64,000 bases of DNA, from positions 197,807 through 261,806 of IMG/VR virus record IMGVR_UViG_3300026097_000876; one strand, given 5' to 3'. The notes under the pieces are model-generated. The model saw only the letters and a program-made list of their open reading frames with translations. It made no database searches and had not been told where the DNA came from. This document shows, one piece after another, positions 18,774 through 53,760 of this stretch (the stretch's first letter is position 1; each line of letters starts with the position of its first letter). A program made the translations under genes and the position numbers.

Positions 18774-20264
18774 ATGGCGTATATAATTAATTTAACAAAT
18801 GGAGTACAGTTAGCCACTGTCGAAGATGGAACCATTGACCAGAGTACTACACTCAAATTAGTTGGTAAAAATTATGCCGGCTACGGTGAAATTCAAAATG
18901 AAAATTTTGTTCATTTAATGGAAAATTTTTCTAGTGCAAATTCACCAGCAAACCCATTATCAGGGCAAATTTGGTTTGATAGTGCTGTAAGAAAATTAAA
19001 GTTTTACGACGGATCTAAATTTAGAACCACAGGCGGTGCCGAAGTTTCCACAACTCAACCAGTGGGATTAACAACAGGTGACTTTTGGTGGGATAGCGAC
19101 AACAGTCAACTATATGCCCAAAATGCTGATGGAGGATTTGTCCTAATTGGTCCTCAAAGTATTGGCGATACAGTCAGTGCAATGGTAACAGCACAAGTAA
19201 GAGATAACGCTCAAAATAATAGAACAATTATTAAAGGTACAGTTGACGACGGTGTTGTTTTTATTGTTAGTAATGCAGAATTTACAATTGATCAAACAGA
19301 CCCAGCTAACGTAATTACTGGTTTTGATGTTATACGTCAAGGTCTTACACTAAGAAATACAACAAGCGGCACAGATGGTGTAACATCAACTGCACATCGA
19401 TTCCACGGCACAGCTACTAATGCTGAACGCCTTGGCGGAGTATCAGCAGAAAACTTTGTACAAAATACTCCGGGGCAAGAAAGTTCCTTTGGTGACATTG
19501 TTAGATTTGCTGATGTAGGACTTACAGTAGGCGCAGCAAACGACCTTGCAATTTATATTGATCAAGCCAATACCGGCGACGAAGGCGTGATTGAAAATAC
19601 TACAGGTAAAAAGATTAGATTTAAAGTAAAATCTACGGGCGGAGTTACAACAGAACCATTGCATATTGCTGCAGAAGGAATTGTTCCTACAGCAACAACA
19701 ACATACGATATTGGTAATGCAAGTTTCAAATTTAGAAATATGTATGCTACGTCATTTAACGGTCTAGCAACAAATGCAACAAACTTACAAGTTGGCTCAA
19801 ATTATAGAACCGGTGATGTGAATGCTACAAATAACACAGTAGCAGTTCGTGATTCTAGTGGTAATTTAGCAGCTAACGTATTTAATGGTATTTCGACTAG
19901 TGCTAGGTACGCTGACTTAGCAGAAAAATATACAACTGAAATCGATCATCCAGTAGGAACAATAATGGCTATTTGCGTTCACGAAGATCACGAAGCAGAT
20001 ATTGCAAATATAGGTGATGTAGTTGTTGGAGTAATCAGTGATAAACCTGCATATTTAATGAATGCAGAAGCTGAAGGACAAGCACTTGCCCTCAAAGGAC
20101 GAGTGCCTGTAAGAACAGTAGGACCGGTCGTCAAAGGACAATCAATTTATGTTAGTCAAGACGGTATTGCTTCAGCAGAAGGCAACGGCGACCTAGTAGG
20201 AATTGCATTAGAATCAAATAATAACACTGCCGAAAAATTAATCGAGTGTGTATTAAAAGTATAA
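18774..20264 (+). CDS. Tail fibre-like protein, paralogue 3
   Basis: Same N-terminal domain (GYGEIQNENFVHLMENFS...GQIWFD); C-terminal SARYADLAEKY...LKGRVPV domain typical of fibre ends. Confidence 0.7.
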   Translation: MAYIINLTNGVQLATVEDGTIDQSTTLKLVGKNYAGYGEIQNENFVHLMENFSSANSPANPLSGQIWFDSAVRKLKFYDGSKFRTTGGAEVSTTQPVGLTTGDFWWDSDNSQLYAQNADGGFVLIGPQSIGDTVSAMVTAQVRDNAQNNRTIIKGTVDDGVVFIVSNAEFTIDQTDPANVITGFDVIRQGLTLRNTTSGTDGVTSTAHRFHGTATNAERLGGVSAENFVQNTPGQESSFGDIVRFADVGLTVGAANDLAIYIDQANTGDEGVIENTTGKKIRFKVKSTGGVTTEPLHIAAEGIVPTATTTYDIGNASFKFRNMYATSFNGLATNATNLQVGSNYRTGDVNATNNTVAVRDSSGNLAANVFNGISTSARYADLAEKYTTEIDHPVGTIMAICVHEDHEADIANIGDVVVGVISDKPAYLMNAEAEGQALALKGRVPVRTVGPVVKGQSIYVSQDGIASAEGNGDLVGIALESNNNTAEKLIECVLKV

Positions 20265-20267
20265 ATA
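20260..20267 (+). promoter_or_regulatory. T4-type late promoter TATAAATA
   Basis: Exact consensus; the 20-mer 20261-20280 is identical to the reverse complement of 53741-53760. Confidence 0.7.
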
Positions 20268-20295
20268 TATACGTAGTTAAAGAGGAAGTATTACT

Positions 20296-21210
20296 ATGGC
20301 AGTCGGCAACGATATTACCGCAGCGAGATATAACAACATACGTTCAAGAATAGCAGCCGTCCTTGGTTTAGGATCAGGCGATGAAGGATATGGTCAATCA
20401 GTAAAAAGTGAAACAATAGCAGTCGGTGCAACTGTTAGTGCTGTTGACATGGAAAATTTGTTTGATGATATGACTAAAATTAGATTGCATCAAACAGGAC
20501 TTGCACCTAGCGAAATTGCCAAGCCTTCGATAGGCGATACTGTAGAAGATTCTAATGTCACTTCGAAAGAAGGATACGTACAGTACGAAGATCTTAGTAT
20601 TACTTGTCAAAGCGCAAGGCTAAATGCAGCTAGTAATCAGCTAGGATTGCAAGCAGGGACTTCTAGTGTTAGATCGGCCGCTTGGTCAACAGATATTAAT
20701 CATTTATTTACTGTTACTTTTGGCGGATATAGTGTTACAAATGGCGATGGATCGACAACAACTGTCTCTGGAGCAGATCATATGCGTGTATTCTTTAATG
20801 CAGGCGGATCTATTAATATCAGCGGGTCAATTGGTAGCGGAAATTCTACAATTAATAATGACTGGCGTAACCTAATGTCAAGTGTAGGTACTGTAGTATT
20901 TGATAGAGATAATACTAGTAACGGATCAACAGGAACTAATTTTGGATATGCAAATCTACCTGGGTCGTACACAACTATCTTTAATAAAACAGCAACAGCA
21001 TATAGTGCTAACGATTATTTAATTGAAGCCTACAAAAGCGGTAATGTACTGTACTTTAGAGTAACATTTAATGAAGACAAAGGACCTAATCCAAATTTTG
21101 ACGAAGCGGTCACGGCTACAACTACAAGTACGGTTCAAATGAACAGGCCTAACAACAGTGCAAGTGTAGACATTACAGCGCCATCTTTTGCAACAACTAA
21201 TAACCTTTAA
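20296..21210 (+). CDS. Virion structural protein (S/T/G-rich)
   Basis: 304 aa, late promoter and SD GAGG, last gene of the tail cluster. Confidence 0.55.
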   Translation: MAVGNDITAARYNNIRSRIAAVLGLGSGDEGYGQSVKSETIAVGATVSAVDMENLFDDMTKIRLHQTGLAPSEIAKPSIGDTVEDSNVTSKEGYVQYEDLSITCQSARLNAASNQLGLQAGTSSVRSAAWSTDINHLFTVTFGGYSVTNGDGSTTTVSGADHMRVFFNAGGSINISGSIGSGNSTINNDWRNLMSSVGTVVFDRDNTSNGSTGTNFGYANLPGSYTTIFNKTATAYSANDYLIEAYKSGNVLYFRVTFNEDKGPNPNFDEAVTATTTSTVQMNRPNNSASVDITAPSFATTNNL

Positions 21211-21213
21211 ACG

Positions 21214-21249
21214 TAAATAGTTATACTATAAACTAGGAGTATAACTATG
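21214..21249 (+). promoter_or_regulatory. Late promoter (TAAATA) followed by an RBS-occluding hairpin
   Basis: TAAATA at 21214-21219; perfect 10-bp inverted repeat 21218-21227/21238-21247 with a 10-nt loop; SD AGGAG at 21235-21239; the 3' arm ends on the A of the ATG. Confidence 0.6.
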
Positions 21250-21594
21250 GATGACGCTCTAGAAAAGGCACTTGAATTCTCAAATTTTACAGCAACCTTA
21301 AATAATCAAAAAAGAATACTTCATGAAAAATATACTGAAGAGCTTGGACTTTACTATTGCGGCGGTAAGTTTACAGTAACAAAAGAATTATTAACGTTTT
21401 GTCATTTGCTTTTAAGTAAAGACATTTCAAAAACTGTAGTAATAGACGATAATAATTCTCCTATCCAAATTGATGACATTGATGATTTTATGACAGTGTC
21501 ATTACAACAATACGCAACTGCCGCTAACAAATATTTTGCGCATTATAAAGAACTTAGTACTAAACGGAGTGTTGAAGGTTTAGCAGATGTCTGA
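21247..21594 (+). CDS. Hypothetical protein, possibly a tail-fibre assembly-type helical protein
   Basis: 115 aa with a strong SD; first gene of the coupled operon; function inferred from position only. Confidence 0.45.
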   Translation: MDDALEKALEFSNFTATLNNQKRILHEKYTEELGLYYCGGKFTVTKELLTFCHLLLSKDISKTVVIDDNNSPIQIDDIDDFMTVSLQQYATAANKYFAHYKELSTKRSVEGLADV

Positions 21595-22414
21595 CGGAGT
21601 ATTATGTTTTGCTCATAATAATGGATCTATTGACTATATAAAGCAAGCGGCGTTCTTGGCAAAAAGAGTAAAACAACATTTAGACATACCAGTGTCTGTT
21701 GTTACATCAACACCTGACAAAATTAATAAAAAACACAGTAAACTATTTGATAATATTATTTTTATTGATGATGACAATACAAATTCTAAAAGATATAATG
21801 ACGGACAGAACACACATCAAAATCTTTATTTTAAAAACAACGGAAGAATAAACAGTTACGACCTTACTCCGTATGATAGAACACTAGTTTTAGATACAGA
21901 TTACATTATTTGTAATGATGTTTTTAAAAATGCATTTGGAAATGGTAAATTTCAAATATATAGAGATGGGGTTGATTTATGTAGCTGGCGAAAACATGCA
22001 GAGTTTGATTATATTAACAATAAAGGCATTCCTTTCTATTGGGCAACTTGTTTCTATTTTGAAAAAGATCTAGAAAATAAGATATTTTTTGATACTCTAA
22101 AACAATTACAATCAAATTGGAGCTACTATAGCACAGTTTATGATTTAGGAAGTCGTAATTTTAGAAATGATCATATTTTTAGTATGGGTATTCATATCAT
22201 GAATGGATTTTCAGATAGCCACTGGGCTAAGTTATTACCGGGTAAAATGTTTTACACACTAGATAGAGATAAATTATACAAACTAGACAATGATAAATTA
22301 GTTTTTATGTTAGAAAAAGAAAGTCGAGTTAATGAATATGTTCTGTCTTCGACAGATCGATGTAATGTACATGTAATGAATAAATTTAGCTTGGAGCGTG
22401 TTTTAGATGTCTAA
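21587..22414 (+). CDS. GT-A glycosyltransferase (GT8-like)
   Basis: YDRTLVLDTDYII DxD motif; RNDHIFS. Confidence 0.65.
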   Translation: MSDGVLCFAHNNGSIDYIKQAAFLAKRVKQHLDIPVSVVTSTPDKINKKHSKLFDNIIFIDDDNTNSKRYNDGQNTHQNLYFKNNGRINSYDLTPYDRTLVLDTDYIICNDVFKNAFGNGKFQIYRDGVDLCSWRKHAEFDYINNKGIPFYWATCFYFEKDLENKIFFDTLKQLQSNWSYYSTVYDLGSRNFRNDHIFSMGIHIMNGFSDSHWAKLLPGKMFYTLDRDKLYKLDNDKLVFMLEKESRVNEYVLSSTDRCNVHVMNKFSLERVLDV

Positions 22415-23216
22415 AGGATACGTAATGATGGCTTCGGGTGCCGAATACGTTAAACAAGCATATTTGTGTGCTAAAAGTATTAGAGAAACTCAAACCATCA
22501 ATAATGTGTCATTGCTTACTAATGACACAGTGCCGCAAGAATATAAATCAGTATTCGACAAAATAATTGAAGTCCCTAACAGTCAAACAGATTTTTATCG
22601 TACAGACTTTCGCTGGAAAGTATTTCATATTACTCCGTATGACGAAACAATTGTATTAGACACTGATATGATATTTCTTACTGATGTTAGTCATTGGTGG
22701 AATTATCTCAGAAAATACGATATCTGTTTTACAAAAAACACAAGAACATATCGTAATACTCTGATAACAAACAATTATTATAGAAAGGCATTTGAAGATA
22801 ATTATCTTCCTAATATTTATTGTGCATTTCATTATTTTAAAAAAACTGACATAGCTTTAAATTATTACTTAAAGTTAAAACAAATTTGTAAAAACTATAA
22901 AGAATTTTATAAAATCTATGTTCCGAAACAAACACCTAAACTAAGTAGTATGGACATTAATCATGCCATTACAGTATTGGATCAACAAATAGAAAATTAT
23001 ATTTTTGAACCTGCTAGTTTTGTACACATGAAAAGCAATGTACAAGATTGGAAAAACCCAACAGAAAATTGGACAGATACTATTCCTTTTTATTTTTCAC
23101 AAGATTTTACTCTTAAAGTTGGAAATTATTTACAACACGGAATCTTTCATTATACCGAAAACAGTTTTTGCAACACTATAATACAACAACTAGGAAAACA
23201 AAATGAAGTATATTGA
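22407..23216 (+). CDS. GT-A glycosyltransferase (GT8-like), paralogue
   Basis: YDETIVLDTDMIF DxD motif; FVHMK; HYT. Confidence 0.65.
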   Translation: MSKGYVMMASGAEYVKQAYLCAKSIRETQTINNVSLLTNDTVPQEYKSVFDKIIEVPNSQTDFYRTDFRWKVFHITPYDETIVLDTDMIFLTDVSHWWNYLRKYDICFTKNTRTYRNTLITNNYYRKAFEDNYLPNIYCAFHYFKKTDIALNYYLKLKQICKNYKEFYKIYVPKQTPKLSSMDINHAITVLDQQIENYIFEPASFVHMKSNVQDWKNPTENWTDTIPFYFSQDFTLKVGNYLQHGIFHYTENSFCNTIIQQLGKQNEVY

Positions 23217-23721
23217 AGTACCTACTCCACAATATGTTTGTTATAATAAAAATACTGGAGAAATTTTTAGCATTGGACCTAGCATTGACGATGAATATTC
23301 TTATATTGAAATTGCAGAAGAGCAATCTCAATTATTTAAAAATTTTACAGAAAGAATGGTTGAATGGAAAGTACTGTATAATAAAAGATCTAAAAAATTT
23401 GAACTTCGTAAAGATATAGAAAAAACAGAAAACGAATTTCCTCTTAAAAAAATTACAAAAGCAGTAGATGAATACGCCGATGTTGAATTAATAATTGACA
23501 AACTAAAAAACTTGTGTTACATTAATATTAATGATCTTCCTGTTAACATAGACAAAGAAATAGAGTTTTTTATAACTAAAGAAAACGATCCACATTTTTT
23601 GTATCAATCTTTAAAGTTTAATTTAGGAAGTGCTGATAAAATACATATTGAGATAGCACATACATACAGTGTATATTCTAATAATATGTTTGTAGAGTGT
23701 GCTGTAAAGGAGATAGTTTGA
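23203..23721 (+). CDS. Hypothetical protein
   Basis: 172-aa ORF overlapping both neighbours. Confidence 0.55.
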   Translation: MKYIEVPTPQYVCYNKNTGEIFSIGPSIDDEYSYIEIAEEQSQLFKNFTERMVEWKVLYNKRSKKFELRKDIEKTENEFPLKKITKAVDEYADVELIIDKLKNLCYININDLPVNIDKEIEFFITKENDPHFLYQSLKFNLGSADKIHIEIAHTYSVYSNNMFVECAVKEIV

Positions 23722-24620
23722 AATTAAAAATTGCAGAACAAGACATTATCTATTTGTCGTACGACGAACCAAATGCAGAAAAAAATTATGCAGACTTGTT
23801 ATCTAAGGTTCCGTGGGCAAAACGAATTCACGGAGTCAAAGGTTCAGATGCGGCACATAAAGCCTGTGCAGAAATTAGCGAAACTGACAGATTTATTACT
23901 GTAGACGGTGATAATATTGTTGATCAAAAATTTTTAGATCAAGTCATTGATTTAGATCAACATACTGATTTAAAGAAAAGTGTTATTAGCTGGTGCGGGC
24001 GTAATGTTATTAATGGACTTGTATACGGCAACGGTGGACTTAAATGTTGGCCTAAAGATTATGTTTTAAATATGCGTACACACGAAGCAGCAGATCCTAA
24101 CGATATTAATGCACAAGTTGAATTTTGTTGGGATGCAGAATACATTCAAATGTCTGACTGTTATAGCACAGTACACAACAATGCAAGTCCAAAACAAGCG
24201 TGGCGAGCAGGTTTTCGTGAAGGTGTAAAACTTGCATTAGACCGAGGCGTAAAAGTAGACAAAGAATTATTTTTACAAAGCCATGAAAAAAATTTACATA
24301 TGTTATATATTTGGCTTATGGTAGGATATGATGTTCCGAACGGGCATTTTTCAGTGTATGGTGCCAGAGAAGGACTTATGATGACTATGCTAAGTGATTG
24401 GGATTATGTTCAGGTCCGTGACTTTGATTATTTAGATAGTCATTGGGAGGGTATTAGTAGCATGCCTATGGATGTTCTTTATAGTGAAATTAATAATAAC
24501 GGATTTATGTTAAGAGATGAGTTAGGTATTCCGATTGCACCTGAACCATTATCAGAAGATCAGAGTGAATTTTTTAAAGCAGTTCACCACAGCTTCGGAA
24601 GAGGTAAACATCTTAAATGA
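23718..24620 (+). CDS. Glycosyltransferase-like protein (GT-A)
   Basis: Probable TTG start at 23718 after AAGGAG; FITVDGD DxD; GVKGSDAAHKACA; WRAGFREGVKL. Confidence 0.55.
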   Translation: MKLKIAEQDIIYLSYDEPNAEKNYADLLSKVPWAKRIHGVKGSDAAHKACAEISETDRFITVDGDNIVDQKFLDQVIDLDQHTDLKKSVISWCGRNVINGLVYGNGGLKCWPKDYVLNMRTHEAADPNDINAQVEFCWDAEYIQMSDCYSTVHNNASPKQAWRAGFREGVKLALDRGVKVDKELFLQSHEKNLHMLYIWLMVGYDVPNGHFSVYGAREGLMMTMLSDWDYVQVRDFDYLDSHWEGISSMPMDVLYSEINNNGFMLRDELGIPIAPEPLSEDQSEFFKAVHHSFGRGKHLK

Positions 24621-25951
24621 ATAAAAATGAAGTAAAACAAAAATTAGATTCGGTTGGTTGCGGATTTTGTCTAGCTAAATGGACGCAAGTTACAATTCAT
24701 CTTGGATCCGGAATCAATCATAGTTGTCATCATGTCAGAGCACATGCAATTCCATTAAAAGATCTTGCTGACAATCCTAATGTTTTACACAACACAGGAT
24801 TCAAAAAGAATACCAGAAAGCAAATGCTAAACAACGAACGTCCTGATGAATGTGACTATTGTTGGAGAATCGAAGATAATACAGATAAACTTAGTGACAG
24901 AGTATTAAAAAGTGCAGATTCCTGGTCTTGGCCTGAATACGATATAATTAGTAAATCTTCAGGAGACGAGGATGTTTATCCTAAATATGTAGAAGTCAGT
25001 TTTAGTAATGTGTGTAATTTTAAATGTGGGTATTGCGGACCTGCATTTAGCAGCAAGTGGGCTGAAGAAATTAATCAACATGGTCCGTACACATTTGATA
25101 AAACTAATTGGAAATATAATTTGATTGACGAATATCAACAACAAATTCCTACTAGAGAACATAATCCTTATATTGAAGCATTTTGGAAATGGTTTCCGGA
25201 AGCTGTTGAACACATGCATACCTTTCGAATTACAGGTGGAGAACCATTACTAAGTAAACATACTGACAAAGTTTTACAACATTTATTAGAAAACCCCCAA
25301 CCAGAATTAGAATTTAGTATTAATACTAATGCATGTCCCCCGAATAATTTGTGGAAAGAATTTACTAAAAAAATAAAAGTTTTAGAAGAAAAAAACTGTA
25401 TTAAAAGATTTGTATTATTTGTAAGTGCAGAAGCCAAAGGAAAACAACAAGAATATAACAGACACGGAATGAATTGGCAATTGTTTGTAGATAATGTAGA
25501 ATACTTTCTTGAAAATACTAATGGGCGGCTTAGTTTTATGAGTGCATTTAATATTTTAAGTGTACCAACATTTTTGCCTTTTTTAAAATATGTATCTAGT
25601 CTCAAAGGAAGATTTGATAATGATGTAAATATTGATATTCCATATGTAAGAAATCCTCATTTTCTAGATTGTATGATTGCAACTGAAGAACTTGTACAAA
25701 CATATTTACATCCTTGTCTTAAATTTATGCAAGAAAAAAACTTTGAAGCGTTTGAGATACAAAAATTTGAAAGAATTCTCGAAGATTTAGATGGTCGTTT
25801 TAAAAATCCAGATAAATTTAAACAAATATCAAATGAAGGACGAAGAATGTTTTACGACTGGATTAGAGAACACGATAAGCGTCGAGGAACAAATTTTGAA
25901 AAAACTTTTCCAGAACTGATAACATTTTATAGAGATTGCTTGTATGTATGA
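24617..25951 (+). CDS. Radical SAM protein with N-terminal twitch domain
   Basis: CNFKCGYC core and ITGGEP; N-terminal CLAKW...SCHH...CDYC precedes the core. Confidence 0.85.
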   Translation: MNKNEVKQKLDSVGCGFCLAKWTQVTIHLGSGINHSCHHVRAHAIPLKDLADNPNVLHNTGFKKNTRKQMLNNERPDECDYCWRIEDNTDKLSDRVLKSADSWSWPEYDIISKSSGDEDVYPKYVEVSFSNVCNFKCGYCGPAFSSKWAEEINQHGPYTFDKTNWKYNLIDEYQQQIPTREHNPYIEAFWKWFPEAVEHMHTFRITGGEPLLSKHTDKVLQHLLENPQPELEFSINTNACPPNNLWKEFTKKIKVLEEKNCIKRFVLFVSAEAKGKQQEYNRHGMNWQLFVDNVEYFLENTNGRLSFMSAFNILSVPTFLPFLKYVSSLKGRFDNDVNIDIPYVRNPHFLDCMIATEELVQTYLHPCLKFMQEKNFEAFEIQKFERILEDLDGRFKNPDKFKQISNEGRRMFYDWIREHDKRRGTNFEKTFPELITFYRDCLYV

Positions 25952-26627
25952 TATTGTGTTTATAAGTTATCATGAATCTAATGCAGAACAAAACTTTGAT
26001 AAATTGCATCAAAGATTTAACAATATAGGCGTTTTTGGAGATAGAATAAAACGGGTATCTAATGTTAAGGGAATACATAATGCACATATCGAAGCTGCTA
26101 AGATAGTTAATACAAACTATTTTTATGTAGTCGATGGAGATGCTGATATTGTAAGTGACTTTAAATTTGATTATGAAACTATTGATAGTGATGTAGTACA
26201 TGTATATTCCAGTATTAATCCTATTAATAATCTTGAATACGGCTACGGTGGAGTAAAATTACTACCAACACAACTTACTAAAAATATAGATACTACTACA
26301 CACGATATGACCACAAGTATATCAAAAAAATTTAAAGTTTTAGATGAAATATCAAATATTACAGCATTTAATACAGATGAATTTAGCACTTGGCGTTCGG
26401 CATTTAGAGAATGTGCAAAATTATCGAGTAGAACAATACAAGGACAAATCGATGAAGAAACCGAACAAAGACTCAAAATTTGGACAACCGTGGGACACGA
26501 TAGAGACTTCGGTGAACATGCCATTAACGGTGCTAGGGCCGGTATGGAGTTTGGCCTTTCTAACCAGTCTGATATATCATTAATAAACGATTTTGATTGG
26601 CTAAAAGAGCAATTCAATAATGATTAA
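25944..26627 (+). CDS. Glycosyltransferase-like protein, paralogue of 23718
   Basis: DIVFISYHE.NAE.N; VKGIHNAH; VVDGDA; GYGGVKL; WRSAFRECAKL. Confidence 0.55.
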   Translation: MYDIVFISYHESNAEQNFDKLHQRFNNIGVFGDRIKRVSNVKGIHNAHIEAAKIVNTNYFYVVDGDADIVSDFKFDYETIDSDVVHVYSSINPINNLEYGYGGVKLLPTQLTKNIDTTTHDMTTSISKKFKVLDEISNITAFNTDEFSTWRSAFRECAKLSSRTIQGQIDEETEQRLKIWTTVGHDRDFGEHAINGARAGMEFGLSNQSDISLINDFDWLKEQFNND

Positions 26628-27471
26628 TATCGTTGTTACAAGTAAACCAGTAGATGGACTTCTTTATTATAGTTACGAATACTGTGATATGCTTAACAAA
26701 GCAGGCTATCCTGCTAAGGTTGTTATTATATGTCACCAAAAATTTAGTGTACTAGATTATATGGAAGTCCTAACCACCAAATACACATATGTAGATAATG
26801 TTGTGTATAACAATTTAAATGTAGGCAATGACGATGTAACACTTGTTATGGGCAGGAGTATGATTACACTGTCTTGGATCAATTACAACGATTATACAGA
26901 AGAACAAAAACAAACACTGCATAGTGTATTTGCTAATAAAGTAATAAGTGTGTATTCAGAAAATCATCCTGCACAATATCCGCAGGCAGTAGAGTTTTAT
27001 AGCCCTAAACAAATTGTAGACCTATGCGACACTGAAGTGTATCCTAATGGCGTAGGAGAACACTTTGAAAAAACAATTAATTTTAGTATATATAAACCGC
27101 ACACAGACAACATACAATTTAAACATTTATTTCTAGGAACAAACGACAAATACTACGCAACAGTAGAAAAGGTAATTGACCAATTTCCTGATCACGGGAT
27201 CTTGACATATGACGAAAAGTATGTTAATATTAAAAATAATAACGTATTTGCACCTGTAGGAAATCTAATGGGCATGTTCGAAACATATGTTTACACAAAA
27301 GAAACATTTGATCCGGCTCCTAGAATCTTTCAAGAGTGCAAATATTATGGAAAGGATGTGATTTACTTGAGAGACAAAAACATACAAGACGGCGGCAGTG
27401 TGTACTGGAAACGAGATCTAAAAGAACCAGATGTAACAGCAATCATAAATGCTATAAAGGAATTTAAATGA
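26620..27471 (+). CDS. Hypothetical protein (possibly a divergent GT-B fold)
   Basis: 283-aa coupled ORF; the C-terminal PRIFQECKYYGKDV is only weakly GT-B-like. Confidence 0.4.
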   Translation: MINIVVTSKPVDGLLYYSYEYCDMLNKAGYPAKVVIICHQKFSVLDYMEVLTTKYTYVDNVVYNNLNVGNDDVTLVMGRSMITLSWINYNDYTEEQKQTLHSVFANKVISVYSENHPAQYPQAVEFYSPKQIVDLCDTEVYPNGVGEHFEKTINFSIYKPHTDNIQFKHLFLGTNDKYYATVEKVIDQFPDHGILTYDEKYVNIKNNNVFAPVGNLMGMFETYVYTKETFDPAPRIFQECKYYGKDVIYLRDKNIQDGGSVYWKRDLKEPDVTAIINAIKEFK

Positions 27472-27827
27472 AAATTGATCCAAAATGTCTAAAATTTAAT
27501 ACCCCAAAAAATAAAGGTGCGGCATATACTTCTGATGGATTTATGCTGCCCTGCTGTTGGATAGACGATCCGCCAGTTTATAGATATCTTGTAGAAATGG
27601 GTATGAAAGATCCGGAATTAGCATTAGAAAATAACGATTGCTTAGAAGACATTTTTACATCAGATCAATGGGAGAACTTCTTCCAAAAATTATACGATGA
27701 TCCTGATCGGTGTTCATATATGTGTAAGAAAAAATGCGGCGTTGAACTTACCGACGGCGAAACTGAAATTCGTAAAGTAGAAGAAAGACTAGAGGTTTTA
27801 AAACAAAGTGAAGGAAAGAATTACTGA
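27468..27827 (+). CDS. Stand-alone SPASM/twitch-like Fe-S protein
   Basis: DGFMLPCCW...CSYMCKKKC in 119 aa, directly upstream of a radical SAM gene. Confidence 0.65.
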   Translation: MKIDPKCLKFNTPKNKGAAYTSDGFMLPCCWIDDPPVYRYLVEMGMKDPELALENNDCLEDIFTSDQWENFFQKLYDDPDRCSYMCKKKCGVELTDGETEIRKVEERLEVLKQSEGKNY

Positions 27828-28551
27828 TACCTATGTAAAATATCAGAAAAATTGCAGGATTAATGTCGATACCTCGCATCGTTGTCCCTTTCGGTGCCCT
27901 CAGTGCGTGAGACAAAAGACAATAAGCCAAGATATGATACGTAGAAGTTTTGATTTGGAAGAACATAACTTTCAAAAAATATTAGATTATTACGATAATG
28001 GTCCTACATTTTGTGGACAAATTTCTGACCCTATCTATCATCCTAGATTTTTAAATTTTTTAAAAATGTGCAATGGACGAAATAGAGCTGTTCGTATTGC
28101 CACAGTAGGTAGTGGTAAAAGCGACGAGTGGTGGGACGAGGCTTATAGCTATGGTCTTGGAGAAAATCAGTGGACTTTCGGAGTAGACGGTATAGACGAA
28201 AAGAGCGAACTGTATCGCGTTGGTAGTAATTTCAAAGATCAATGGCGTCGAATGCAACAGGGTAGAGATCTAGGACATGTAATTGTTTGGCAGTATATTA
28301 TATTTGGTTATAATGAACACGAAATAGATCAGGCAGTAGAAATTGCAAAGAAAGAAGATTTTACTCTGCTTTTTGTTAACACAAACAGGGGATTTAATCC
28401 AGAAAGTGATACCCTGAGAAAGAATGTTAATTTTAAAATAAACAGTCCCGATCCAAAGCATCTTACTGATCGTCTTAAGAAAGAATGGTATGCTCATACC
28501 ACAGATGTATTTCAGGCCTGGCGTGATCTTCCTCCTTGGAGTCCGAAATGA
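27808..28551 (+). CDS. Radical SAM protein (core only)
   Basis: CPFRCPQC; FCGQISDP; FGVDG; WQYIIF.YNEH. Confidence 0.85.
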   Translation: MKERITDTYVKYQKNCRINVDTSHRCPFRCPQCVRQKTISQDMIRRSFDLEEHNFQKILDYYDNGPTFCGQISDPIYHPRFLNFLKMCNGRNRAVRIATVGSGKSDEWWDEAYSYGLGENQWTFGVDGIDEKSELYRVGSNFKDQWRRMQQGRDLGHVIVWQYIIFGYNEHEIDQAVEIAKKEDFTLLFVNTNRGFNPESDTLRKNVNFKINSPDPKHLTDRLKKEWYAHTTDVFQAWRDLPPWSPK

Positions 28552-29117
28552 AAAGTAAAAAGAATAGCCTAGTTAAATGTGAGCATTATCCAACATTATT
28601 TTATGATACGCAATCTGATACTTTTGTAAAGTATTATAGTGATCGAGCTCCTTTTGAAAAATGGTGGAGTGTTTATAGAGAGTATCAAAATTTTGAACAT
28701 AGAACTGTGCAGGTTTTAGACGTAAATTTCAAAAAGAAATACTTTGTAATGGAGTCAATAAAAGGTATTAATCTTGAGCACGAGATGATTAAACTAGATT
28801 TTGAGGATACAAAGAAAGTTCTGACACAGACTTTAGAAATTTTTAGTAATAAATTTAGTTTTGCATGCGAAGCTATGCATGACACAGAGATATTTTTCCA
28901 TAAAGACTTTCGAACTGAAAATCTCATGTTTGACGAAAATAAAAATGTGAGACTAGTAGACCCTGATAGTTTCAGTGTTTTGCCACTTGATAGAATGAAT
29001 AATTTATTGTTTTTTGGAAGGTACATGGATACTCTTACATCCATTCGAGAACGCCTTAGTTTTGCAGAGCTTACCGAAGAGCAAAAATATCGATTAGGAA
29101 GAGGATATTTATACTAA
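28548..29117 (+). CDS. Protein kinase-like/APH-fold kinase
   Basis: Catalytic loop HKDFRTEN and LVDPD; ATG at 28548 gives an ATGA overlap. Confidence 0.6.
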   Translation: MKSKKNSLVKCEHYPTLFYDTQSDTFVKYYSDRAPFEKWWSVYREYQNFEHRTVQVLDVNFKKKYFVMESIKGINLEHEMIKLDFEDTKKVLTQTLEIFSNKFSFACEAMHDTEIFFHKDFRTENLMFDENKNVRLVDPDSFSVLPLDRMNNLLFFGRYMDTLTSIRERLSFAELTEEQKYRLGRGYLY

Positions 29118-30190
29118 TGATTTCTTATGACGGCTGGGATAAGGAGTATCAAGAAAATCGAGAAGAATACTTGGAAGTGTTTGATCGTTTTATGAGTCAA
29201 ATGAATTACGAAAATAATGAAGACTGGGAGCGTAGTTTTGCAGAACGTGTAGGTCGTAAACATTGTGTTAGTGTTGCTAGTGCCACAGATGCACTACACT
29301 TTACGCTATTAGCACACGGTATTGGTACAGACGACGAAGTACTAGTAACAGACTTTAGTTGGATTAGTAGTTCAGCTTGCGTAAGTATGGTAGGTGCCAC
29401 TCCAGTATTTTGCGACATTGACTTAGATACATATCATATGAGCTTAGACAGCATACAGCGCATGTACAGCAGTAAGACTAAGGCAATTGTATATGTACAC
29501 CTATTTGGTAACATGACTGACACAAGCGCAATACAAGCGTTCTGTGCAGAAAAAAATATACTGTTTATCGAAGATGCTGCACAGAGTTTAGGTAGTAGTC
29601 TCAACGGTGTTAGAGCAGGCACTATTGGCGATTGCAGTGTGTACAGTTTTAACTCAAACAAAGTTATTGCAGGCATCAACGGCGGCGGCGTTGTGTTAAC
29701 CGACAACGAAGATATTGCAAAACGTGTAAAGCAGATTCGCAGACACGGCAAAGACAAAACATTCGACACGCTAGGCTACAACAGTCGCATGTATGTGCTT
29801 AATGCAGAAATTATTAATCTGCGATTACAACGTGCAGAAGAAAATCAATCAAAGCGTCAAGATATTGCAAAACGTTACAACGAAGCATTTGCAGAGTTGT
29901 CTGTAGTAACACAAGCAATGTCAAACGGATTAAATCACAACTATCACAAATACGTAGTAAGATTCAAAGACAAGGACACTAGAAAGCGTGTTAAAGACGC
30001 CTTAAATGCTAGTATACACTACGAGACTCCGTTGAGTGCTAACGGTATGTACGACACACTACAGTGCAGGAGAGACGCTTGTACAGCGTCTGTGACGGCA
30101 TCTAATACTGTTTTATCGTTGCCGATACACGCTTGGTTAACTGAGGATGAAATAAGTAATATTATCAAACTAGTTAAGGATAACATATGA
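29117..30190 (+). CDS. DegT/DnrJ/EryC1/StrS PLP-dependent sugar aminotransferase
   Basis: SATDALH; GATPVFCDID; IEDAAQS; SFNSNK (PLP lysine); GYNSRM; LSLPIH. Confidence 0.9.
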   Translation: MISYDGWDKEYQENREEYLEVFDRFMSQMNYENNEDWERSFAERVGRKHCVSVASATDALHFTLLAHGIGTDDEVLVTDFSWISSSACVSMVGATPVFCDIDLDTYHMSLDSIQRMYSSKTKAIVYVHLFGNMTDTSAIQAFCAEKNILFIEDAAQSLGSSLNGVRAGTIGDCSVYSFNSNKVIAGINGGGVVLTDNEDIAKRVKQIRRHGKDKTFDTLGYNSRMYVLNAEIINLRLQRAEENQSKRQDIAKRYNEAFAELSVVTQAMSNGLNHNYHKYVVRFKDKDTRKRVKDALNASIHYETPLSANGMYDTLQCRRDACTASVTASNTVLSLPIHAWLTEDEISNIIKLVKDNI

Positions 30191-30906
30191 TAGAAGAATT
30201 ATTTGGTAAAAGAAAACATGTTGTACATTATGATACAGAAATTATTCCTACACGATCCGAAGTAGAAGAAATACTAAGAGTAGGGTATTCTCTAGCAACA
30301 TCCAAACAGAAGGCTTATGCCTATAAGTTTTGGATATTAGGACCAAATAAAGAACGCAGTCACATGTTATGGGAAATGGCTGAAGGTAGGAAAATTGATG
30401 TGGATTACGAAGCATACGGTACTACTACAAAAGATAAAAAATATGTTGCTAATCCCGCTTTGTTCCATCTAAAAAGTTCTCCGTGGACTTTTTTGGTTAC
30501 TCCGAGAACTTCGTCCCCTAATCCGCATTTTAAGTATGCATTTGAAACTGCTGGCAGTAAATGGCAGTTAGAAGACAGGGACTTTGTTAATACAAAAAAC
30601 AGAGAATCAAATGCCATAGATGTAGGAATGGTGGCAAAAACAATCAGCGGAGCCGCATTTGAAAAAGGTTGGGATGTATCATACAATATCTGTTTTGAAA
30701 ACGACAAAACAAAATGGCCAAAGTGTCTTCCATTCATTAGTGACCATGCTACAGGTTTTAGGCCTGTAATGATGATGACCTTAGGAAAAGGAAAAAAATA
30801 TTATTATGAAAGATTGATTAGTGACGGCACAATCGCAAATGATCCTAAATATAATGCAGATCCTCCTTTTGAAACTATTTTCGAATTTTTTGACGAGAAC
30901 AAATGA
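30187..30906 (+). CDS. Nitroreductase-fold protein 1
   Basis: KRKHV..YD; ATSKQKAYAYKFWILGP; IDVGM; MMMTLGK. Confidence 0.6.
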   Translation: MIEELFGKRKHVVHYDTEIIPTRSEVEEILRVGYSLATSKQKAYAYKFWILGPNKERSHMLWEMAEGRKIDVDYEAYGTTTKDKKYVANPALFHLKSSPWTFLVTPRTSSPNPHFKYAFETAGSKWQLEDRDFVNTKNRESNAIDVGMVAKTISGAAFEKGWDVSYNICFENDKTKWPKCLPFISDHATGFRPVMMMTLGKGKKYYYERLISDGTIANDPKYNADPPFETIFEFFDENK

Positions 30907-31592
30907 TGGAAAATTATAAGTATGTTTTAGAGTATGATAATTCTGCATTTATTGATCCTACTCATATTGATAATGCATTAGAATATGCTTGGAAGGTAAC
31001 TCCGTCAAAACAAAATTTTATGCCTTATAAGGTGCATGTTCTCTCACCCGAAGCTGAAGGGCATAAACAAATTTTATACAACAAAGCACTCATTCAACAA
31101 GCGCGAGGATCAGGAATTAAGATAAAAAATTCTAAAGCCTTGCAAAAATATGATCAGCGATTAAAGAATGATGACATGCAACCTTTTTTTCGTAATTTAA
31201 AAACAGCTCCGTATGTTTTTATATTTGCACAGCGGGTTGAAGACGAACCTAATCCATTCCAGCAACATAATATCAATTATGGATTAACATATTGTCAAAC
31301 AGAGAATAGCGACCCCGGACATGCACACGGTAAAGATATTGCAAGAATTGAAATAGGCATGTTCAGTGCAAATCTTGCATCGCATTTGTTAACTAATAAG
31401 ATAGATGTTTCTTTTACACAGTGTTTTCCTGGTGAGCTTGACACTTGGACTGAAAAAGAATTTAAATTTTTAAAAGATGACGTTCTTTTAATTATGACGG
31501 CAGGCAAAGGCAAAATATATAGAAGAGATCTTAAATCACAAGAAAAAGATCTAAAACCAAATTTTAAAAGAATAGTAAACAAGGAAGTATAA
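30903..31592 (+). CDS. Nitroreductase-fold protein 2
   Basis: AWKVTPSKQNFMPYKVHV; IEIGMF; LIMTAGK. Confidence 0.7.
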   Translation: MMENYKYVLEYDNSAFIDPTHIDNALEYAWKVTPSKQNFMPYKVHVLSPEAEGHKQILYNKALIQQARGSGIKIKNSKALQKYDQRLKNDDMQPFFRNLKTAPYVFIFAQRVEDEPNPFQQHNINYGLTYCQTENSDPGHAHGKDIARIEIGMFSANLASHLLTNKIDVSFTQCFPGELDTWTEKEFKFLKDDVLLIMTAGKGKIYRRDLKSQEKDLKPNFKRIVNKEV

Positions 31593-32272
31593 TGATTAAA
31601 AAGATTTTAGACAAATGGAAATATGTTCTTGCATTCGATACTGAACACAGAACAGACAAAACTGTTATTAAAGACATAATGCATACAGCTTGGCAGACAA
31701 CGCCGAGCAAAAACAGTTTCATGCCTTATAGAGTTCATGTATTTGGCCCAGGAGAAGAAAAGTCAAAAAGAATAATATATGAAACAAGTGCCGCAAAAGA
31801 GAAAAATTCAAACAGCAGAAATTCGAACCCCGATCAATGGGAAGTTAATTCAAATAAAGCAAGTTTATTAACAGCTGAATATATCCTGGTATTCACTCCG
31901 AGAGCAGAAGATAATCCTAGTCCTTGGCAAATTCATCTACACAACGGCGGGTGCTACATGGATGCATGGTACGAAGACAAATTAAAAAAATATAGGGCAA
32001 CAATTTTAGTAGAAGTTGGGTTATTTGCACAAGCAGTCTCTACATTGTGTTTAGAACAAGGTCTGCATACTAACTACATTTCATCATTTGAATCAGATTT
32101 AGAATACTGGAAAGATCTTGACTTTATAAAGCATCCACCTTGTCTAATTATGGGAATAGGTAAGGCTAAGTATTTTCGTAGAGAATGGATGAAAAAAATC
32201 GGATGGGACGAAGGTGATCATAAACCGAGCTTCAGCAGTGTAGTTAATTTCCATGGAATTGATACCGAATGA
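31592..32272 (+). CDS. Nitroreductase-fold protein 3
   Basis: AWQTTPSKNSFMPYRVHV; VEVGLF; LIMGIGK. Confidence 0.7.
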   Translation: MIKKILDKWKYVLAFDTEHRTDKTVIKDIMHTAWQTTPSKNSFMPYRVHVFGPGEEKSKRIIYETSAAKEKNSNSRNSNPDQWEVNSNKASLLTAEYILVFTPRAEDNPSPWQIHLHNGGCYMDAWYEDKLKKYRATILVEVGLFAQAVSTLCLEQGLHTNYISSFESDLEYWKDLDFIKHPPCLIMGIGKAKYFRREWMKKIGWDEGDHKPSFSSVVNFHGIDTE

Positions 32273-32907
32273 TGTCAACCGATCAAATGGAAAATAATTT
32301 TTTTAACCGAACTGAAGTAAATGTGGATATTGCATATAGATGTGCTCTTGACTGTCCGAGATGTCAACGTTGGAGGGTCTATAGAAAGCATAACAAGAAA
32401 GTTCCAGGTTATGACATGACCATGACTGAGTTTAAAAGAATTGTCTCACACTTTACTGAAGTTAGTTTTTGCGGACAGTATTCTGATCCAATTCATCATC
32501 CGAAATTTATTGATTTTCTAAAACTATGCAAGGATAAAGGTATAAAAGCATCTGTGCATAATGCATCATCTGCTAAATCAGAAGATTGGTATATTCAAGC
32601 ATTTAAAGCAAATCCCAATGCTCAATGGTTTTTTGGAATAGACGGGTTGCCTCATCAGAGCCATCAGTATAGAATTAATCAAGATGGCGTAAAACTTTAT
32701 AATATTATGCTAGAAGCAAAAAAGTATTTAAAAACAAAACCAATATGGCAGTACATCATTTTTAATTACAATGAAAATCATGTCGAAGAAGCTAAAAAAA
32801 TGGCTGACGACGACGACGTCTATTTTATGTTAGTAAGATCTTCTAGGTGGGACCGAGACGATCCATTAATGCCTACTCTTAAAGAATATAAGTTAAATAG
32901 ATTATGA
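32269..32907 (+). CDS. Radical SAM protein (core only), paralogue of 27808
   Basis: CALDCPRC; FCGQYSDP; FGIDG; WQYIIFNYNE. Confidence 0.85.
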   Translation: MMSTDQMENNFFNRTEVNVDIAYRCALDCPRCQRWRVYRKHNKKVPGYDMTMTEFKRIVSHFTEVSFCGQYSDPIHHPKFIDFLKLCKDKGIKASVHNASSAKSEDWYIQAFKANPNAQWFFGIDGLPHQSHQYRINQDGVKLYNIMLEAKKYLKTKPIWQYIIFNYNENHVEEAKKMADDDDVYFMLVRSSRWDRDDPLMPTLKEYKLNRL

Positions 32908-33239
32908 CTGTAGAATTAAAACCAAAATGTTTTGAAGATCAGCAGATGGCTGTAACTAATAGAGGTCATTTAATACCTTGTTGTTATTGCGATACTCAGC
33001 ATACTATGAATGATTTAGAATTTCAAAAACTATTGAAAGTTAGCAAAATAAGCGACTATAACAGTATAGAAGAAATTTTGAATACAAACGAATGGAAAGA
33101 GTTTTATAAAAATCTGCAACAAAATATTGGGCCTCGTGCTTGTCAGACTGTCTGTGCTAAAAATAAAAAAGACCCGTTAAATATTAAAGAAATAGAAGAC
33201 GGTCGAACAGGAAAAATTATACATACTAGAATTGCATAG
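32904..33239 (+). CDS. Stand-alone SPASM/twitch-like Fe-S protein
   Basis: RGHLIPCCYC...ACQTVC in 111 aa, directly downstream of a radical SAM gene. Confidence 0.65.
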   Translation: MTVELKPKCFEDQQMAVTNRGHLIPCCYCDTQHTMNDLEFQKLLKVSKISDYNSIEEILNTNEWKEFYKNLQQNIGPRACQTVCAKNKKDPLNIKEIEDGRTGKIIHTRIA

Positions 33240-33258
33240 CAACATATGGAAGATTAAA

Positions 33259-33930
33259 ATGTTAGAAGAGTTAATGCTGAAAAGGCAACAAGTAAGATTT
33301 TTTGATAGAGAAAACTATCCTAGCGAAAAAATAATTTACTCAATCTTAGAAAAAACTTATCAAATAGTTCCATCTAAACAAAATTTAGTGCCTTACAAAG
33401 TCCATGTGTTAGGTCCAAGCATGGAAGAACATAAAAGAGAGTTATATCTTTTATCTTCTAAACAACAGCTAGGTGACAAGTTAAATTATAACGAACTTGC
33501 CAAACGTAATAGCGGAAATACACAGTTGTTGGCTCCTTATGTTCTACTTTTTGAAAAAAGATTACCAGAACCTAACGATTTTGTAAAAAAAGAAATGCTC
33601 CTAGGACATAAATTTAATGAATGTTTGCCCGAACAACAAAGAAATCAAAGGATAGCTACAGCTATCGAGGTGGGTATGTTTACAGCAATGCTATCTGGGT
33701 TTTGTATGGAGGAAGATATTTCTCTAAGTTATATAGGATGCCTTCCTGGAAACCCAGAAACCTACAAAAATAATCCTTCTGTCAATTTTGATTTTATCGA
33801 ACAACACATTTTTTTAGGGATAGGCATAGGTTACCAAGACTATTCTATCGAAGAAAATCTTAGATTATCTCGTTTACAAAATTGTGGAGAGATAAAACCT
33901 AAAAGTGATAATGTAATTGTTAAACATTAA
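33259..33930 (+). CDS. Nitroreductase-fold protein 4
   Basis: KRQQVRFFD; PSKQNLVPYKVHVLGP; IEVGMF; GIGIG. The ATG at 33259 is preferred over the TTG at 33232. Confidence 0.7.
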   Translation: MLEELMLKRQQVRFFDRENYPSEKIIYSILEKTYQIVPSKQNLVPYKVHVLGPSMEEHKRELYLLSSKQQLGDKLNYNELAKRNSGNTQLLAPYVLLFEKRLPEPNDFVKKEMLLGHKFNECLPEQQRNQRIATAIEVGMFTAMLSGFCMEEDISLSYIGCLPGNPETYKNNPSVNFDFIEQHIFLGIGIGYQDYSIEENLRLSRLQNCGEIKPKSDNVIVKH

Positions 33931-33935
33931 TGGTG

Positions 33936-33964
33936 TTGACAATTCATATTAATTAGTGTATAAT
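33936..33964 (+). promoter_or_regulatory. Consensus sigma70 promoter TTGACA-N17-TATAAT
   Basis: -35 at 33936-33941, -10 at 33959-33964; SD AGGA before the ATG at 33993. Confidence 0.85.
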
Positions 33965-53435: not shown

Positions 53436-53722
53436 TCTTCTCTCACAACTTCCCCGTCAGTTAATTTGTACACAGCAAATTCATCTGACTTAAATGTTTC
53501 GTTTAATTTTTTTGCTAAGTTGTGAGCATGTCCTGGATTACTAAAACTTACTTTTTTATATTTAGGTCCGGGATAGTTTGTAAGAGCGTTAGATGTTTTT
53601 AAATTAAAAGGCTTTCCTTGATAGAATACAGCCCATATTGCATCTGCTAGTAATACTTGCTCTGATTTGTATGTTGATTTGTCGATATTTTCTAAAATAA
53701 TCGTTGGTTTTGGACGACTCAT
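53432..53722 (-). CDS. Hypothetical protein
   Basis: 96 aa, SD AAAGGA. Confidence 0.65.
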   Translation of the reverse strand: MSRPKPTIILENIDKSTYKSEQVLLADAIWAVFYQGKPFNLKTSNALTNYPGPKYKKVSFSNPGHAHNLAKKLNETFKSDEFAVYKLTDGEVVREE

Positions 53723-53760
53723 ATACGTAATTCCTTTAAGTTAACTACGTATATATTTAT
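53720..53760 (-). promoter_or_regulatory. Late promoter ATAAATA followed by an RBS/start-occluding hairpin
   Basis: ATAAATA at 53754-53760; 12-bp stem (one G-U) 53743-53754/53721-53732; 10-nt loop ending AAAGG; the 3' arm includes AT of the ATG. Confidence 0.6.

What the first reader, a model, noticed from the sequence alone, without database searches (positions are those of the whole stretch)
21214..21249. Late promoter inside an RBS-occluding hairpin heads the 18-gene modification operon
Seen: a perfect 10-bp stem with a 10-nt loop covers part of the SD and the A of the ATG, and TAAATA overlaps the foot of the 5' arm. Established: T4 genes such as e, soc and 49 use this layout, where long transcripts fold and block translation while late transcripts start inside the stem. 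Inference: because downstream genes overlap, this hairpin could gate the whole island.
Basis: partly seen in the sequence, partly recalled or inferred. Interest (0 to 1): 0.6.

Follow-up and report, generated by a model that had tools for sequence, protein, structure and literature searches.

The report
Late promoter inside start-codon-masking hairpin
An uncultured marine jumbo phage puts a T4-style late promoter inside a small RNA hairpin that masks the start of a sugar-modification operon, a known T4 trick here found conserved in dozens of related phages, though what it gates and when is still untested.

Summary
A perfect 11-bp stem (21217-21227 / 21238-21248, 10-nt loop) pairs the last three bases of TAAATA (21214-21219) with the spacer and the AU of the ATG at 21247. 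It is one of 15 such perfect repeats in 262 kb; random genomes give 0-2.

TAAATA is very probably a real late promoter. It is the most enriched hexamer upstream of gene starts (45 seen, 5.6 expected), and the phage encodes a gp55-like late sigma factor. The motif is invariant in all 20 distinct relatives with this gene order.

By T4 spacing, transcription starts at 21225. That transcript lacks the 5' arm and folds open.

The arms are about 90% conserved, against 47% at neighbouring synonymous sites. Loop length varies from 4 to 14 nt. Covariation at this locus is weak.

A second hairpin of the same layout (53720-53755, minus strand) has significant covariation.

Two claims are not supported:
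- Temporal gating. Upstream transcription is itself late, from tail-fibre genes.
- Control of all 18 genes. Several have their own ribosome sites, and promoter-like sites lie inside the run.

There are no RNA data. I class it as a new member of the T4 e/soc/49 layout.

The parts
20296..21210 (+). Upstream 304-aa ORF, the last gene of the tail-fibre block; stop TAA at 21208-21210, 6 nt before the 5' arm
   Evidence: 66-81% identical in 52 IMG/VR loci. No Pfam or PHROG hit. Has its own TAAATA at 20262-20267.
21214..21219 (+). TAAATA, the predicted gp55-type late-promoter core; its flanks (G at -1, G at +6) depart from the genome consensus A-TAAATA-C
   Evidence: Invariant in all 20 distinct TAAATA-to-ATG segments of relatives with this gene order.
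21225..21225 (+). Predicted late transcription start (inferred, not mapped)
   Evidence: T4 late box spans -13 to -6 (PMC2988020). RNA starting at 21225 has MFE -3.2 kcal/mol, z = +0.87.
21217..21227 (+). 5' arm of the hairpin; overlaps the last 3 nt of TAAATA
   Evidence: 92% mean pairwise identity among relatives.
21228..21237 (+). 10-nt loop; holds the first three bases (AGG) of the SD AGGAG (21235-21239)
   Evidence: Loop sequence and length (4-14 nt) vary among relatives.
21238..21248 (+). 3' arm: AG of the SD, the SD-ATG spacer, and A and U of the start codon
   Evidence: At least 88% identity among relatives.
21247..21594 (+). Gene 1, a 115-aa protein of unknown function; first gene of the run
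   Evidence: 257 relatives in IMG/VR. Always followed by the glycosyltransferase-like gene 2.
21247..33930 (+). Run of 18 overlapping or abutting ORFs. Includes a GT8-like glycosyltransferase, a twitch-domain radical SAM, further radical SAM/SPASM proteins, a kinase-like protein, a PseC/LegC-like aminotransferase and nitroreductase-like proteins
33936..33964 (+). Perfect sigma70-type promoter (TTGACA-17-TATAAT) in the 62-nt gap, heading the next unit (33993-36891)
53720..53759 (-). Second instance of the same layout: TAAATA at 53754-53759, a 13-bp hairpin (53743-53755 / 53720-53732) that pairs the whole AUG of the 96-aa gene 53432-53722
   Evidence: -12.6 kcal/mol, z = -3.0. Covariation across 45 relatives is significant.

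Best explanation
The site is a T4 gene-e-type translational insulator at the head of a glycan or radical-SAM modification operon in a T4-related jumbo phage. TAAATA (21214-21219) is read by host RNA polymerase carrying the phage's gp55-like late sigma, and transcription starts about 6 nt downstream, near 21225. Such transcripts keep only 3 nt of the 5' arm, so the SD and AUG of gene 1 are free. Transcripts that read through from the late tail-fibre genes upstream carry both arms; no terminator lies between. They fold an 11-bp hairpin of -9 to -12 kcal/mol that buries the AUG, the spacer and part of the SD, so gene 1 is poorly initiated on them. The effect would be that the enzyme operon's output follows its own, probably weak, late promoter rather than the abundant structural mRNAs. 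Shown: the sequence features, their excess over chance, motif enrichment, presence of the sigma factor, conservation, and a second covarying example. Inferred: the start site, read-through, and the effect on translation.
For: Hairpin.
Promoter:
- TAAATA is the top-enriched hexamer at -50..-8 (45 seen, 5.6 expected) and is depleted genome-wide relative to hexamers of the same composition.
- 46 sites lie 9-45 nt from starts, with consensus A-TAAATA-C.
- A late sigma is encoded (phrog_12791, E = 1.7e-81), next to gp47/gp46 homologues.
- An ATAAATA late motif is reported for the related jumbo phages CBB and GAP32 (PMC5259590).
Geometry: T4 box at -13..-6; the short transcript is unstructured; T4 gene e has the same anatomy; the T4 mechanism is described in PMC3014915.
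Conservation, among relatives whose adjacent codon third positions are 47% identical:
- TAAATA is 100% identical and the arms 88-92%.
- The loop varies from 4 to 14 nt.
- 97% of cells are paired, with one compensatory UA-to-AU change and four GC-to-GU changes.
- Register-shifted or different stems keep the same logic in L037/L043, L042 and L132.
Relatives with a sigma70 promoter at the same place show a promoter is expected here.
Generality:
- The second locus has significant covariation (0 of 500 shuffles).
- TAAATA genes show more long-versus-short RBS occlusion than matched controls (0.16 against about 0.07; p = 0.0006-0.008).
No terminator lies at 21210-21250. The phage's real terminators are GC-rich with T runs.
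Against: No 5'-end or expression data were available; no RNA run was listed.
- Covariation at this locus is not significant (57 of 500 shuffles). The arms are conserved mostly as primary sequence, which could reflect promoter-proximal or spacer constraints instead.
- Three of the five SD bases lie in the loop. Mean RBS pairing is only moderately above that with shuffled upstream sequence (0.75 against 0.57 +/- 0.12, p about 0.10).
- The flanks of TAAATA are non-consensus (G at -1, G at +6).
- The upstream stop codon is 6 nt from the 5' arm, so terminating ribosomes may open the hairpin. That favours coupling over silencing.
- Upstream transcription is late rather than early, so the T4 rationale does not transfer directly.
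- L049 has an SD-masking hairpin with no recognisable promoter, and L139/L140 carry a mid-stem mismatch.
Confidence: 0.5

Rival explanations
1. Translational-coupling device. On read-through mRNAs the hairpin keeps gene 1 closed unless a ribosome finishing the upstream 304-aa ORF (stop 21208-21210, 6 nt from the 5' arm) melts the foot of the stem. Gene 1 would then be made in proportion to the tail-fibre-block protein. The TAAATA promoter adds an independent route.
For: The stop codon, 3 nt and then TAAATA is a fixed spacing in all relatives that have the same upstream gene. The upstream ORF has a good SD. The downstream genes of the run overlap, which suits coupling.
Against: T4 gene e has the same close upstream stop, 2 nt from the arm, yet long transcripts are reported to give about 100-fold less lysozyme (PMC3014915). 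Coupling does not explain why TAAATA is invariant, nor why the arm always overlaps it. The fixed spacing may only reflect a very short spacer.
Confidence: 0.2
2. An RNA boundary or stability element. The hairpin marks or protects the 3' end of tail-fibre mRNAs, or is a processing site, and its overlap with the RBS is secondary.
For: It lies immediately after a stop codon at the border between structural and enzyme genes. The RsoM2USA homologue has a GC-rich hairpin after two TAAATA copies that does not touch the RBS.
Against: There is no T run, and only one G-C and one C-G pair among the 11. The phage's evident terminators are GC-rich with T runs. In every variant the 3' arm is anchored at the ATG, including stems of different sequence. 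The second locus pairs the whole AUG.
Confidence: 0.1
3. Primary-sequence constraint with incidental complementarity. The 5' arm is conserved as promoter-proximal or initially transcribed sequence; it contains TATACT, this phage's early -10 hexamer, and may be a relic of the sigma70 promoter seen in other relatives. The 3' arm is conserved as an RBS spacer. No RNA structure is selected.
For: Little covariation. TATACT is the commonest -10 of the phage's TTGACA-17 promoters, and GTTATACTATAA-like sequence follows sigma70 promoters in relatives and at window 51801. Gene 20296 has a near-identical spacer before its ATG without a hairpin.
Against: An 11-bp perfect complement is rare. Changes that do occur keep pairing: one compensatory change and four G-U. 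Relatives L037/L043, L042 and L132 rebuild pairing with other sequence or in another register. Loop length drifts while the arms stay. The sister locus covaries significantly.
Confidence: 0.12
4. A double-stranded DNA operator: the inverted repeat binds a dimeric regulator over the late promoter.
For: Both arms are conserved as sequence.
Against: Arm-to-arm spacing ranges from 4 to 14 nt among relatives, which a rigid dimer would not tolerate. G-C to G-T changes keep RNA pairing but break DNA symmetry.
Confidence: 0.03

Closest known systems
T4 gene e (lysozyme) leader: late promoters inside an RBS-sequestering hairpin
   Same: In both, an upstream ORF's stop is followed within a few nt by a late box that overlaps the 5' arm, a loop of about 8-10 nt, and a 3' arm running into the AUG. 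In both, the own-promoter transcript lacks the 5' arm. I read the T4 sequence directly (-14.9 kcal/mol, z = -3.8). The mechanism is reviewed in PMC3014915.
   Different: T4 has the full TATAAATA box, twice, and buries the whole SD. Here the core is TAAATA with non-consensus flanks, and three of the five SD bases are in the loop. In T4 the silenced long transcripts are early ones; here they would be late read-through from tail-fibre genes. The gene served is an enzyme operon, not a lysis gene.
T4 soc, gene 49 and I-TevI leaders
   Same: They belong to the same class: the SD and/or AUG lies in a helix on long transcripts, and a late promoter removes the 5' strand (PMC3014915). The second instance here heads a small (96-aa), highly conserved late gene, as soc is.
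   Different: I compared no sequences for these three. Identity of the 96-aa gene with soc was not shown (no Pfam or PHROG hit).
ATAAATA late-promoter motif of Rak2-like jumbo phages (CBB, GAP32) with a gp55-like sigma
   Same: The same motif lies upstream of structural genes, a gp55-like sigma is present, and no T4 gp45 homologue was found (PMC5259590; here; gp33 was not searched for here).
   Different: That work predicts promoters only. No RBS-masking hairpins were described there, and this phage lacks CBB's TGAAACG promoter class. Its late sigma is closest to those of the PA5oct and Atu_ph07 types, at 42-49% identity.
Translational coupling through hairpin melting (MS2 coat/replicase and bacterial operon junctions)
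   Same: An RBS hairpin sits within reach of ribosomes terminating on the upstream ORF.
   Different: This is recalled from general knowledge and was not tested here. Those systems have no promoter inside the stem.

Membership tests
T4-type late-promoter-in-hairpin translational control (e, soc, 49, I-TevI) | A stable helix that includes the SD and/or AUG on transcripts starting upstream | tested here: met
   11-bp stem plus outer helix, -11.6 kcal/mol, z = -5.0. It persists in a 126-nt context. It pairs A and U of the AUG and AG of the SD.
T4-type late-promoter-in-hairpin translational control (e, soc, 49, I-TevI) | A late promoter placed so that its transcript lacks the 5' strand of the helix | tested here: met
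   In silico only. TAAATA at 21214-21219 puts +1 at 21225 by T4 spacing, which leaves 3 nt of the arm. That RNA is unstructured. The same holds in all 20 distinct relatives, which keep 0-5 nt.
T4-type late-promoter-in-hairpin translational control (e, soc, 49, I-TevI) | A gp55-type late sigma factor and a genome-wide late-promoter motif | tested here: met
   phrog_12791 E = 1.7e-81; T4 gp55 tblastn hit; TAAATA enriched 8-fold upstream of starts.
T4-type late-promoter-in-hairpin translational control (e, soc, 49, I-TevI) | Early or middle transcripts that read through the gene and are kept silent | tested here: not met
   No sigma70-type promoter of at least 11/12 matches lies on the + strand of the block upstream. 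The upstream genes have TAAATA sites. Long transcripts would be late.
T4-type late-promoter-in-hairpin translational control (e, soc, 49, I-TevI) | Mapped 5' ends inside the stem, and a measured translation difference between long and short leaders | not testable with these tools
   No RNA run was listed for this sequence.
Conserved RNA secondary structure | Compensatory base changes across relatives | tested here: inconclusive
   At this locus: 97% paired, one double change, and 57 of 500 shuffles as good. At the sister locus 53720-53755: four pairs with double changes and 0 of 500 shuffles.
Intrinsic terminator | A GC-rich stem followed by a T run | tested here: not met
   One G-C and one C-G pair among 11, and no T run. 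It was not called by the scan. Compare the real terminators.

The most novel reading that the evidence does not exclude
In this lineage of marine jumbo phages the late-promoter-in-hairpin layout may be a general design rule rather than a one-off. In long, terminator-poor late transcription units, many genes would be translatable only from their own promoter's transcript, which insulates each gene's dosage from read-through. The same operon head would have swapped between a sigma70 early promoter and a gp55 late promoter plus hairpin as it moved next to the tail-fibre genes.
Probability: 0.25. Interest if true: 0.55.

Novelty: new member of a known kind. Interest (0 to 1): 0.4.

Why it matters
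If true, a regulatory trick known from a handful of T4 genes would extend to distant, uncultured jumbo phages. It would also serve a different purpose there: insulating an enzyme operon from structural-gene read-through, rather than delaying lysis. The natural variants offer a ready-made comparative test set for how promoter position and mRNA folding jointly set translation: about 20 hairpin versions, relatives that carry a sigma70 promoter instead, and a covarying sister locus. The finding also flags a widespread, uncharacterised operon next to tail-fibre genes, made of a small 115-aa protein, a GT8-like glycosyltransferase and a twitch radical SAM enzyme. Its timing evidently differs between phages.

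Tried and rejected
- Near-identity DNA search of phage records found nothing.
- RNA evidence: no run was listed.
- I tested whether relatives with a sigma70 promoter also mask the RBS with sequence upstream of the start. As a class they do not: duplex test mean z = -0.45, and pairing against shuffled upstream sequence 0.63 versus 0.60. A few do so individually (L050/L053, L046, L069/L070, L093).
- A sigma70 promoter at this site is rejected. TATACT at 21222-21227 has no usable -35 (1-2 of 6 matches, read), and nothing was listed there.
- A CBB-type TGAAACG promoter class is not enriched in this genome.
- An intrinsic terminator and a dsDNA operator are rejected (see rivals).
- The 5' arm is not a dispersed repeat. 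There is only one other exact copy, in a sigma70 promoter leader at window 51804, minus strand.
- T4 gp43, gp44, gp45, gp62 and regA homologues were not found by tblastn. The record is about 73% complete, so absence is not shown.
- The PA5oct papers gave no late start-site spacing.
- The large protein searches were not needed and were not run.

Full report
**Context.** The window is bases 197807-261806 of a 261,806-bp IMG/VR virus record estimated at 73% complete. It is AT-rich, at about 35% G+C.

The phage is a distant T4 relative. It encodes homologues of T4 gp55, gp47 and gp46 in T4 order. The gp55-like ORF matches PHROG 'sigma factor for late transcription' at E = 1.7e-81. It is 42-49% identical to the late sigmas of jumbo phages PA5oct, Phosso and Atu_ph07.

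Upstream of the finding lie a giant ORF (1-14199) and tail-fibre-like genes. Downstream lie 18 overlapping ORFs (21247-33930).

**The observation.** One search shows the following features:
- TAA stop of the upstream ORF at 21208-21210.
- TAAATA at 21214-21219.
- AGGAG at 21235-21239.
- ATG at 21247.

The stem is 11 perfect pairs (21217-21227 with 21238-21248), with a 10-nt loop and a 3-bp outer helix. Folding energy is -9.1 kcal/mol for the core and -11.6 kcal/mol for 42 nt (z = -5.0).

The genome holds 15 perfect inverted repeats of at least 11 bp, against 0-2 in random genomes. Only this one reaches a start codon. The stem pairs A and U of the AUG, the spacer, and AG of the SD. The first three SD bases (AGG) are in the loop.

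**Is TAAATA a promoter?**
- TAAATA is the most enriched hexamer at -50..-8 of gene starts (45 observed, 5.6 expected). It is the rarest of all A4T2 hexamers genome-wide.
- Forty-six sites lie 9-45 nt before starts, many of them before structural genes. The consensus is A-TAAATA-C.
- The only other enriched upstream motif is TTGACA. It forms many TTGACA-17-TATACT early promoters.
- The related phages CBB and GAP32 are reported to use ATAAATA before structural genes and to carry a gp55-like sigma (PMC5259590).
- In T4 the 8-bp late box spans -13 to -6 (PMC2988020). That places +1 here at 21225.
- The site's flanks (G at -1, G at +6) are minority variants, so it may be a weak promoter.

**Long versus short RNA.** RNA starting at 21225 is unstructured (MFE -3.2 kcal/mol, z = +0.87). 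RNA starting upstream keeps the hairpin. T4 gene e, read directly, has the same anatomy: stop codon, late box in the 5' arm, and SD to AUG in the 3' arm, at -14.9 kcal/mol. The review PMC3014915 states that the e, soc, 49 and I-TevI leaders work this way.

**Relatives.** The 115-aa gene 1 has 257 relatives in IMG/VR. It is always followed by gene 2. Two kinds of operon head occur:
- Where gene 1 follows the conserved 304-aa ORF, as it does here, almost all loci have TAAATA plus the hairpin. There are 20 distinct TAAATA-to-ATG segments.
- Elsewhere, and in one locus with the same upstream gene (L142, the same contig as L020), a near-perfect TTGACA-17-TATA(A/C)T promoter sits at the same place.

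Among the loci with the hairpin:
- TAAATA is 100% identical.
- The 5' arm is 92% identical and the 3' arm at least 88%.
- The three bases before TAAATA are 60% identical.
- Codon third positions next door are 47% identical.

Loop length ranges from 4 to 14 nt, which argues for RNA rather than a DNA operator.

Pairing is kept in 97% of cells. There is one compensatory change (UA to AU, in L132) and four G-C to G-U changes. With so little variation the test is not significant (57 of 500 shuffles). L037/L043 use TAAATA itself as part of the arm, and L042 uses a different 3' arm. In all 20 variants a start 6 nt after TAAATA leaves only 0-5 nt of the 5' arm.

Relatives headed by a sigma70 promoter do not, as a group, mask the RBS.

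**A second, better-supported example.** Gene 53432-53722 (minus strand, 96 aa) has TAAATA at 53754-53759. A 13-bp hairpin pairs its whole AUG (-12.6 kcal/mol, z = -3.0). The predicted late transcript is open.

Across 45 distinct relatives the hairpin covaries:
- Four pairs carry double changes, in 25 cells.
- The covariation score is 0.161 against 0.092 in shuffles, with 0 of 500 shuffles as high.
- Controls with the 3' partners slid by 1-3 columns score far lower.
- L218 has a wholly different stem at the same place.

Genome-wide, TAAATA-headed genes show more RBS pairing in long than in own-promoter transcripts than matched controls do (0.16 against about 0.07; p = 0.0006-0.008). Selection for this layout in this lineage is therefore credible.

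**What does not follow.**
- Temporal gating. No strong sigma70-type promoter lies on the + strand upstream in this block. The upstream genes have TAAATA sites at 14197, 18742 and 20262. No terminator precedes 21247. The long transcripts would therefore be late read-through. That makes the hairpin an insulator, or a coupling device, rather than an early-off/late-on switch.
- Coupling. The upstream stop is 6 nt from the arm, so coupling by terminating ribosomes is a serious rival. T4 gene e shares this feature.
- Control of the whole island. Several downstream genes have SD-like sites and others do not. Near-consensus promoter-like sites lie inside the run (21771-21799 and 28287-28314; internal TAAATA sites). 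A perfect sigma70 promoter at 33936-33964 heads the next unit.

**The island.**
- Gene 2 folds with high confidence (pLDDT 93) as a GT8/GT-A glycosyltransferase. The best structural matches are glycogenin, UGGT and LgtC (Foldseek E about 4e-7). It has an invariant DxD motif.
- Gene 6 is a twitch-domain radical SAM protein (NF033640, 310 bits).
- Others are radical SAM or SPASM proteins, a kinase-like protein, a PseC/LegC-like aminotransferase and nitroreductase-like proteins.
- A carbamoyltransferase lies in the next unit.

'Modification operon' is reasonable, but the target is unknown. The first seven genes are syntenic in Ralstonia phage RsoM2USA. There, two TAAATA copies and a hairpin that does not mask the RBS precede gene 1.

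**Verdict.** The promoter assignment is likely, at about 0.8. The RNA structure is probably under selection, at about 0.7. The silencing mechanism is plausible but unproven, with overall confidence 0.5. It is a new member of a known kind.

Noticed in passing
window 53720-53759 (- strand), gene 53432-53722: A second TAAATA-plus-hairpin layout pairs the whole AUG of a 96-aa gene that is highly conserved (more than 594 relatives). Covariation is significant, and one relative (L218) has a wholly different stem at the same place.
   Followed up: yes
window 33936-33964: A perfect TTGACA-17-TATAAT promoter lies in the only gap of the island. It heads a radical SAM, a carbamoyltransferase and a methyltransferase-like unit (33993-36891), so the island mixes late and early-type promoters.
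   Followed up: partly
window 21587-22414: Gene 2 is a GT8-like GT-A glycosyltransferase (glycogenin, UGGT and LgtC fold) with an invariant DxD. With the PseC-like aminotransferase, several radical SAM proteins and a carbamoyltransferase, it suggests glycan synthesis or transfer next to the tail-fibre genes.
   Followed up: partly
window 1-14199: A single ORF of more than 4,700 codons runs off the 5' end of the window. It is followed by three paralogous tail-fibre-like genes (14831, 16912, 18774) that share an N-terminal domain (phrog_15511/14394).
   Followed up: no
loci L020/L142, L050/L053, L049: L020/L142 keeps the same upstream gene but has a sigma70 promoter. In its predicted fold, the end of the upstream ORF pairs with the SD across the promoter. 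L050/L053 place an anti-SD in the promoter spacer (z = -4 to -4.6). L049 has a 7-bp SD-masking hairpin with no recognisable promoter.
   Followed up: partly
window 20262-20295 and 53722-53759: Two unrelated late genes share the leader module of TAAATA followed by TATACGTAGTTAA. Genes 20296 and 21247 share a nearly identical spacer before the ATG. Late leaders seem to be built from shared modules.
   Followed up: no
genome 63-70 kb (outside the window): A dense cluster of TTGACA-17-TATACT promoters lies before small ORFs, which is typical of an early region. TATACT, not TATAAT, is the commonest -10 hexamer.
   Followed up: no
L090 (Ralstonia phage RsoM2USA, MG752970) 8900-8980: This soil jumbo phage has a syntenic operon. 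Two TAAATA copies come right after the upstream stop, followed by a 9-bp GC-rich hairpin that does not touch the RBS.
   Followed up: partly
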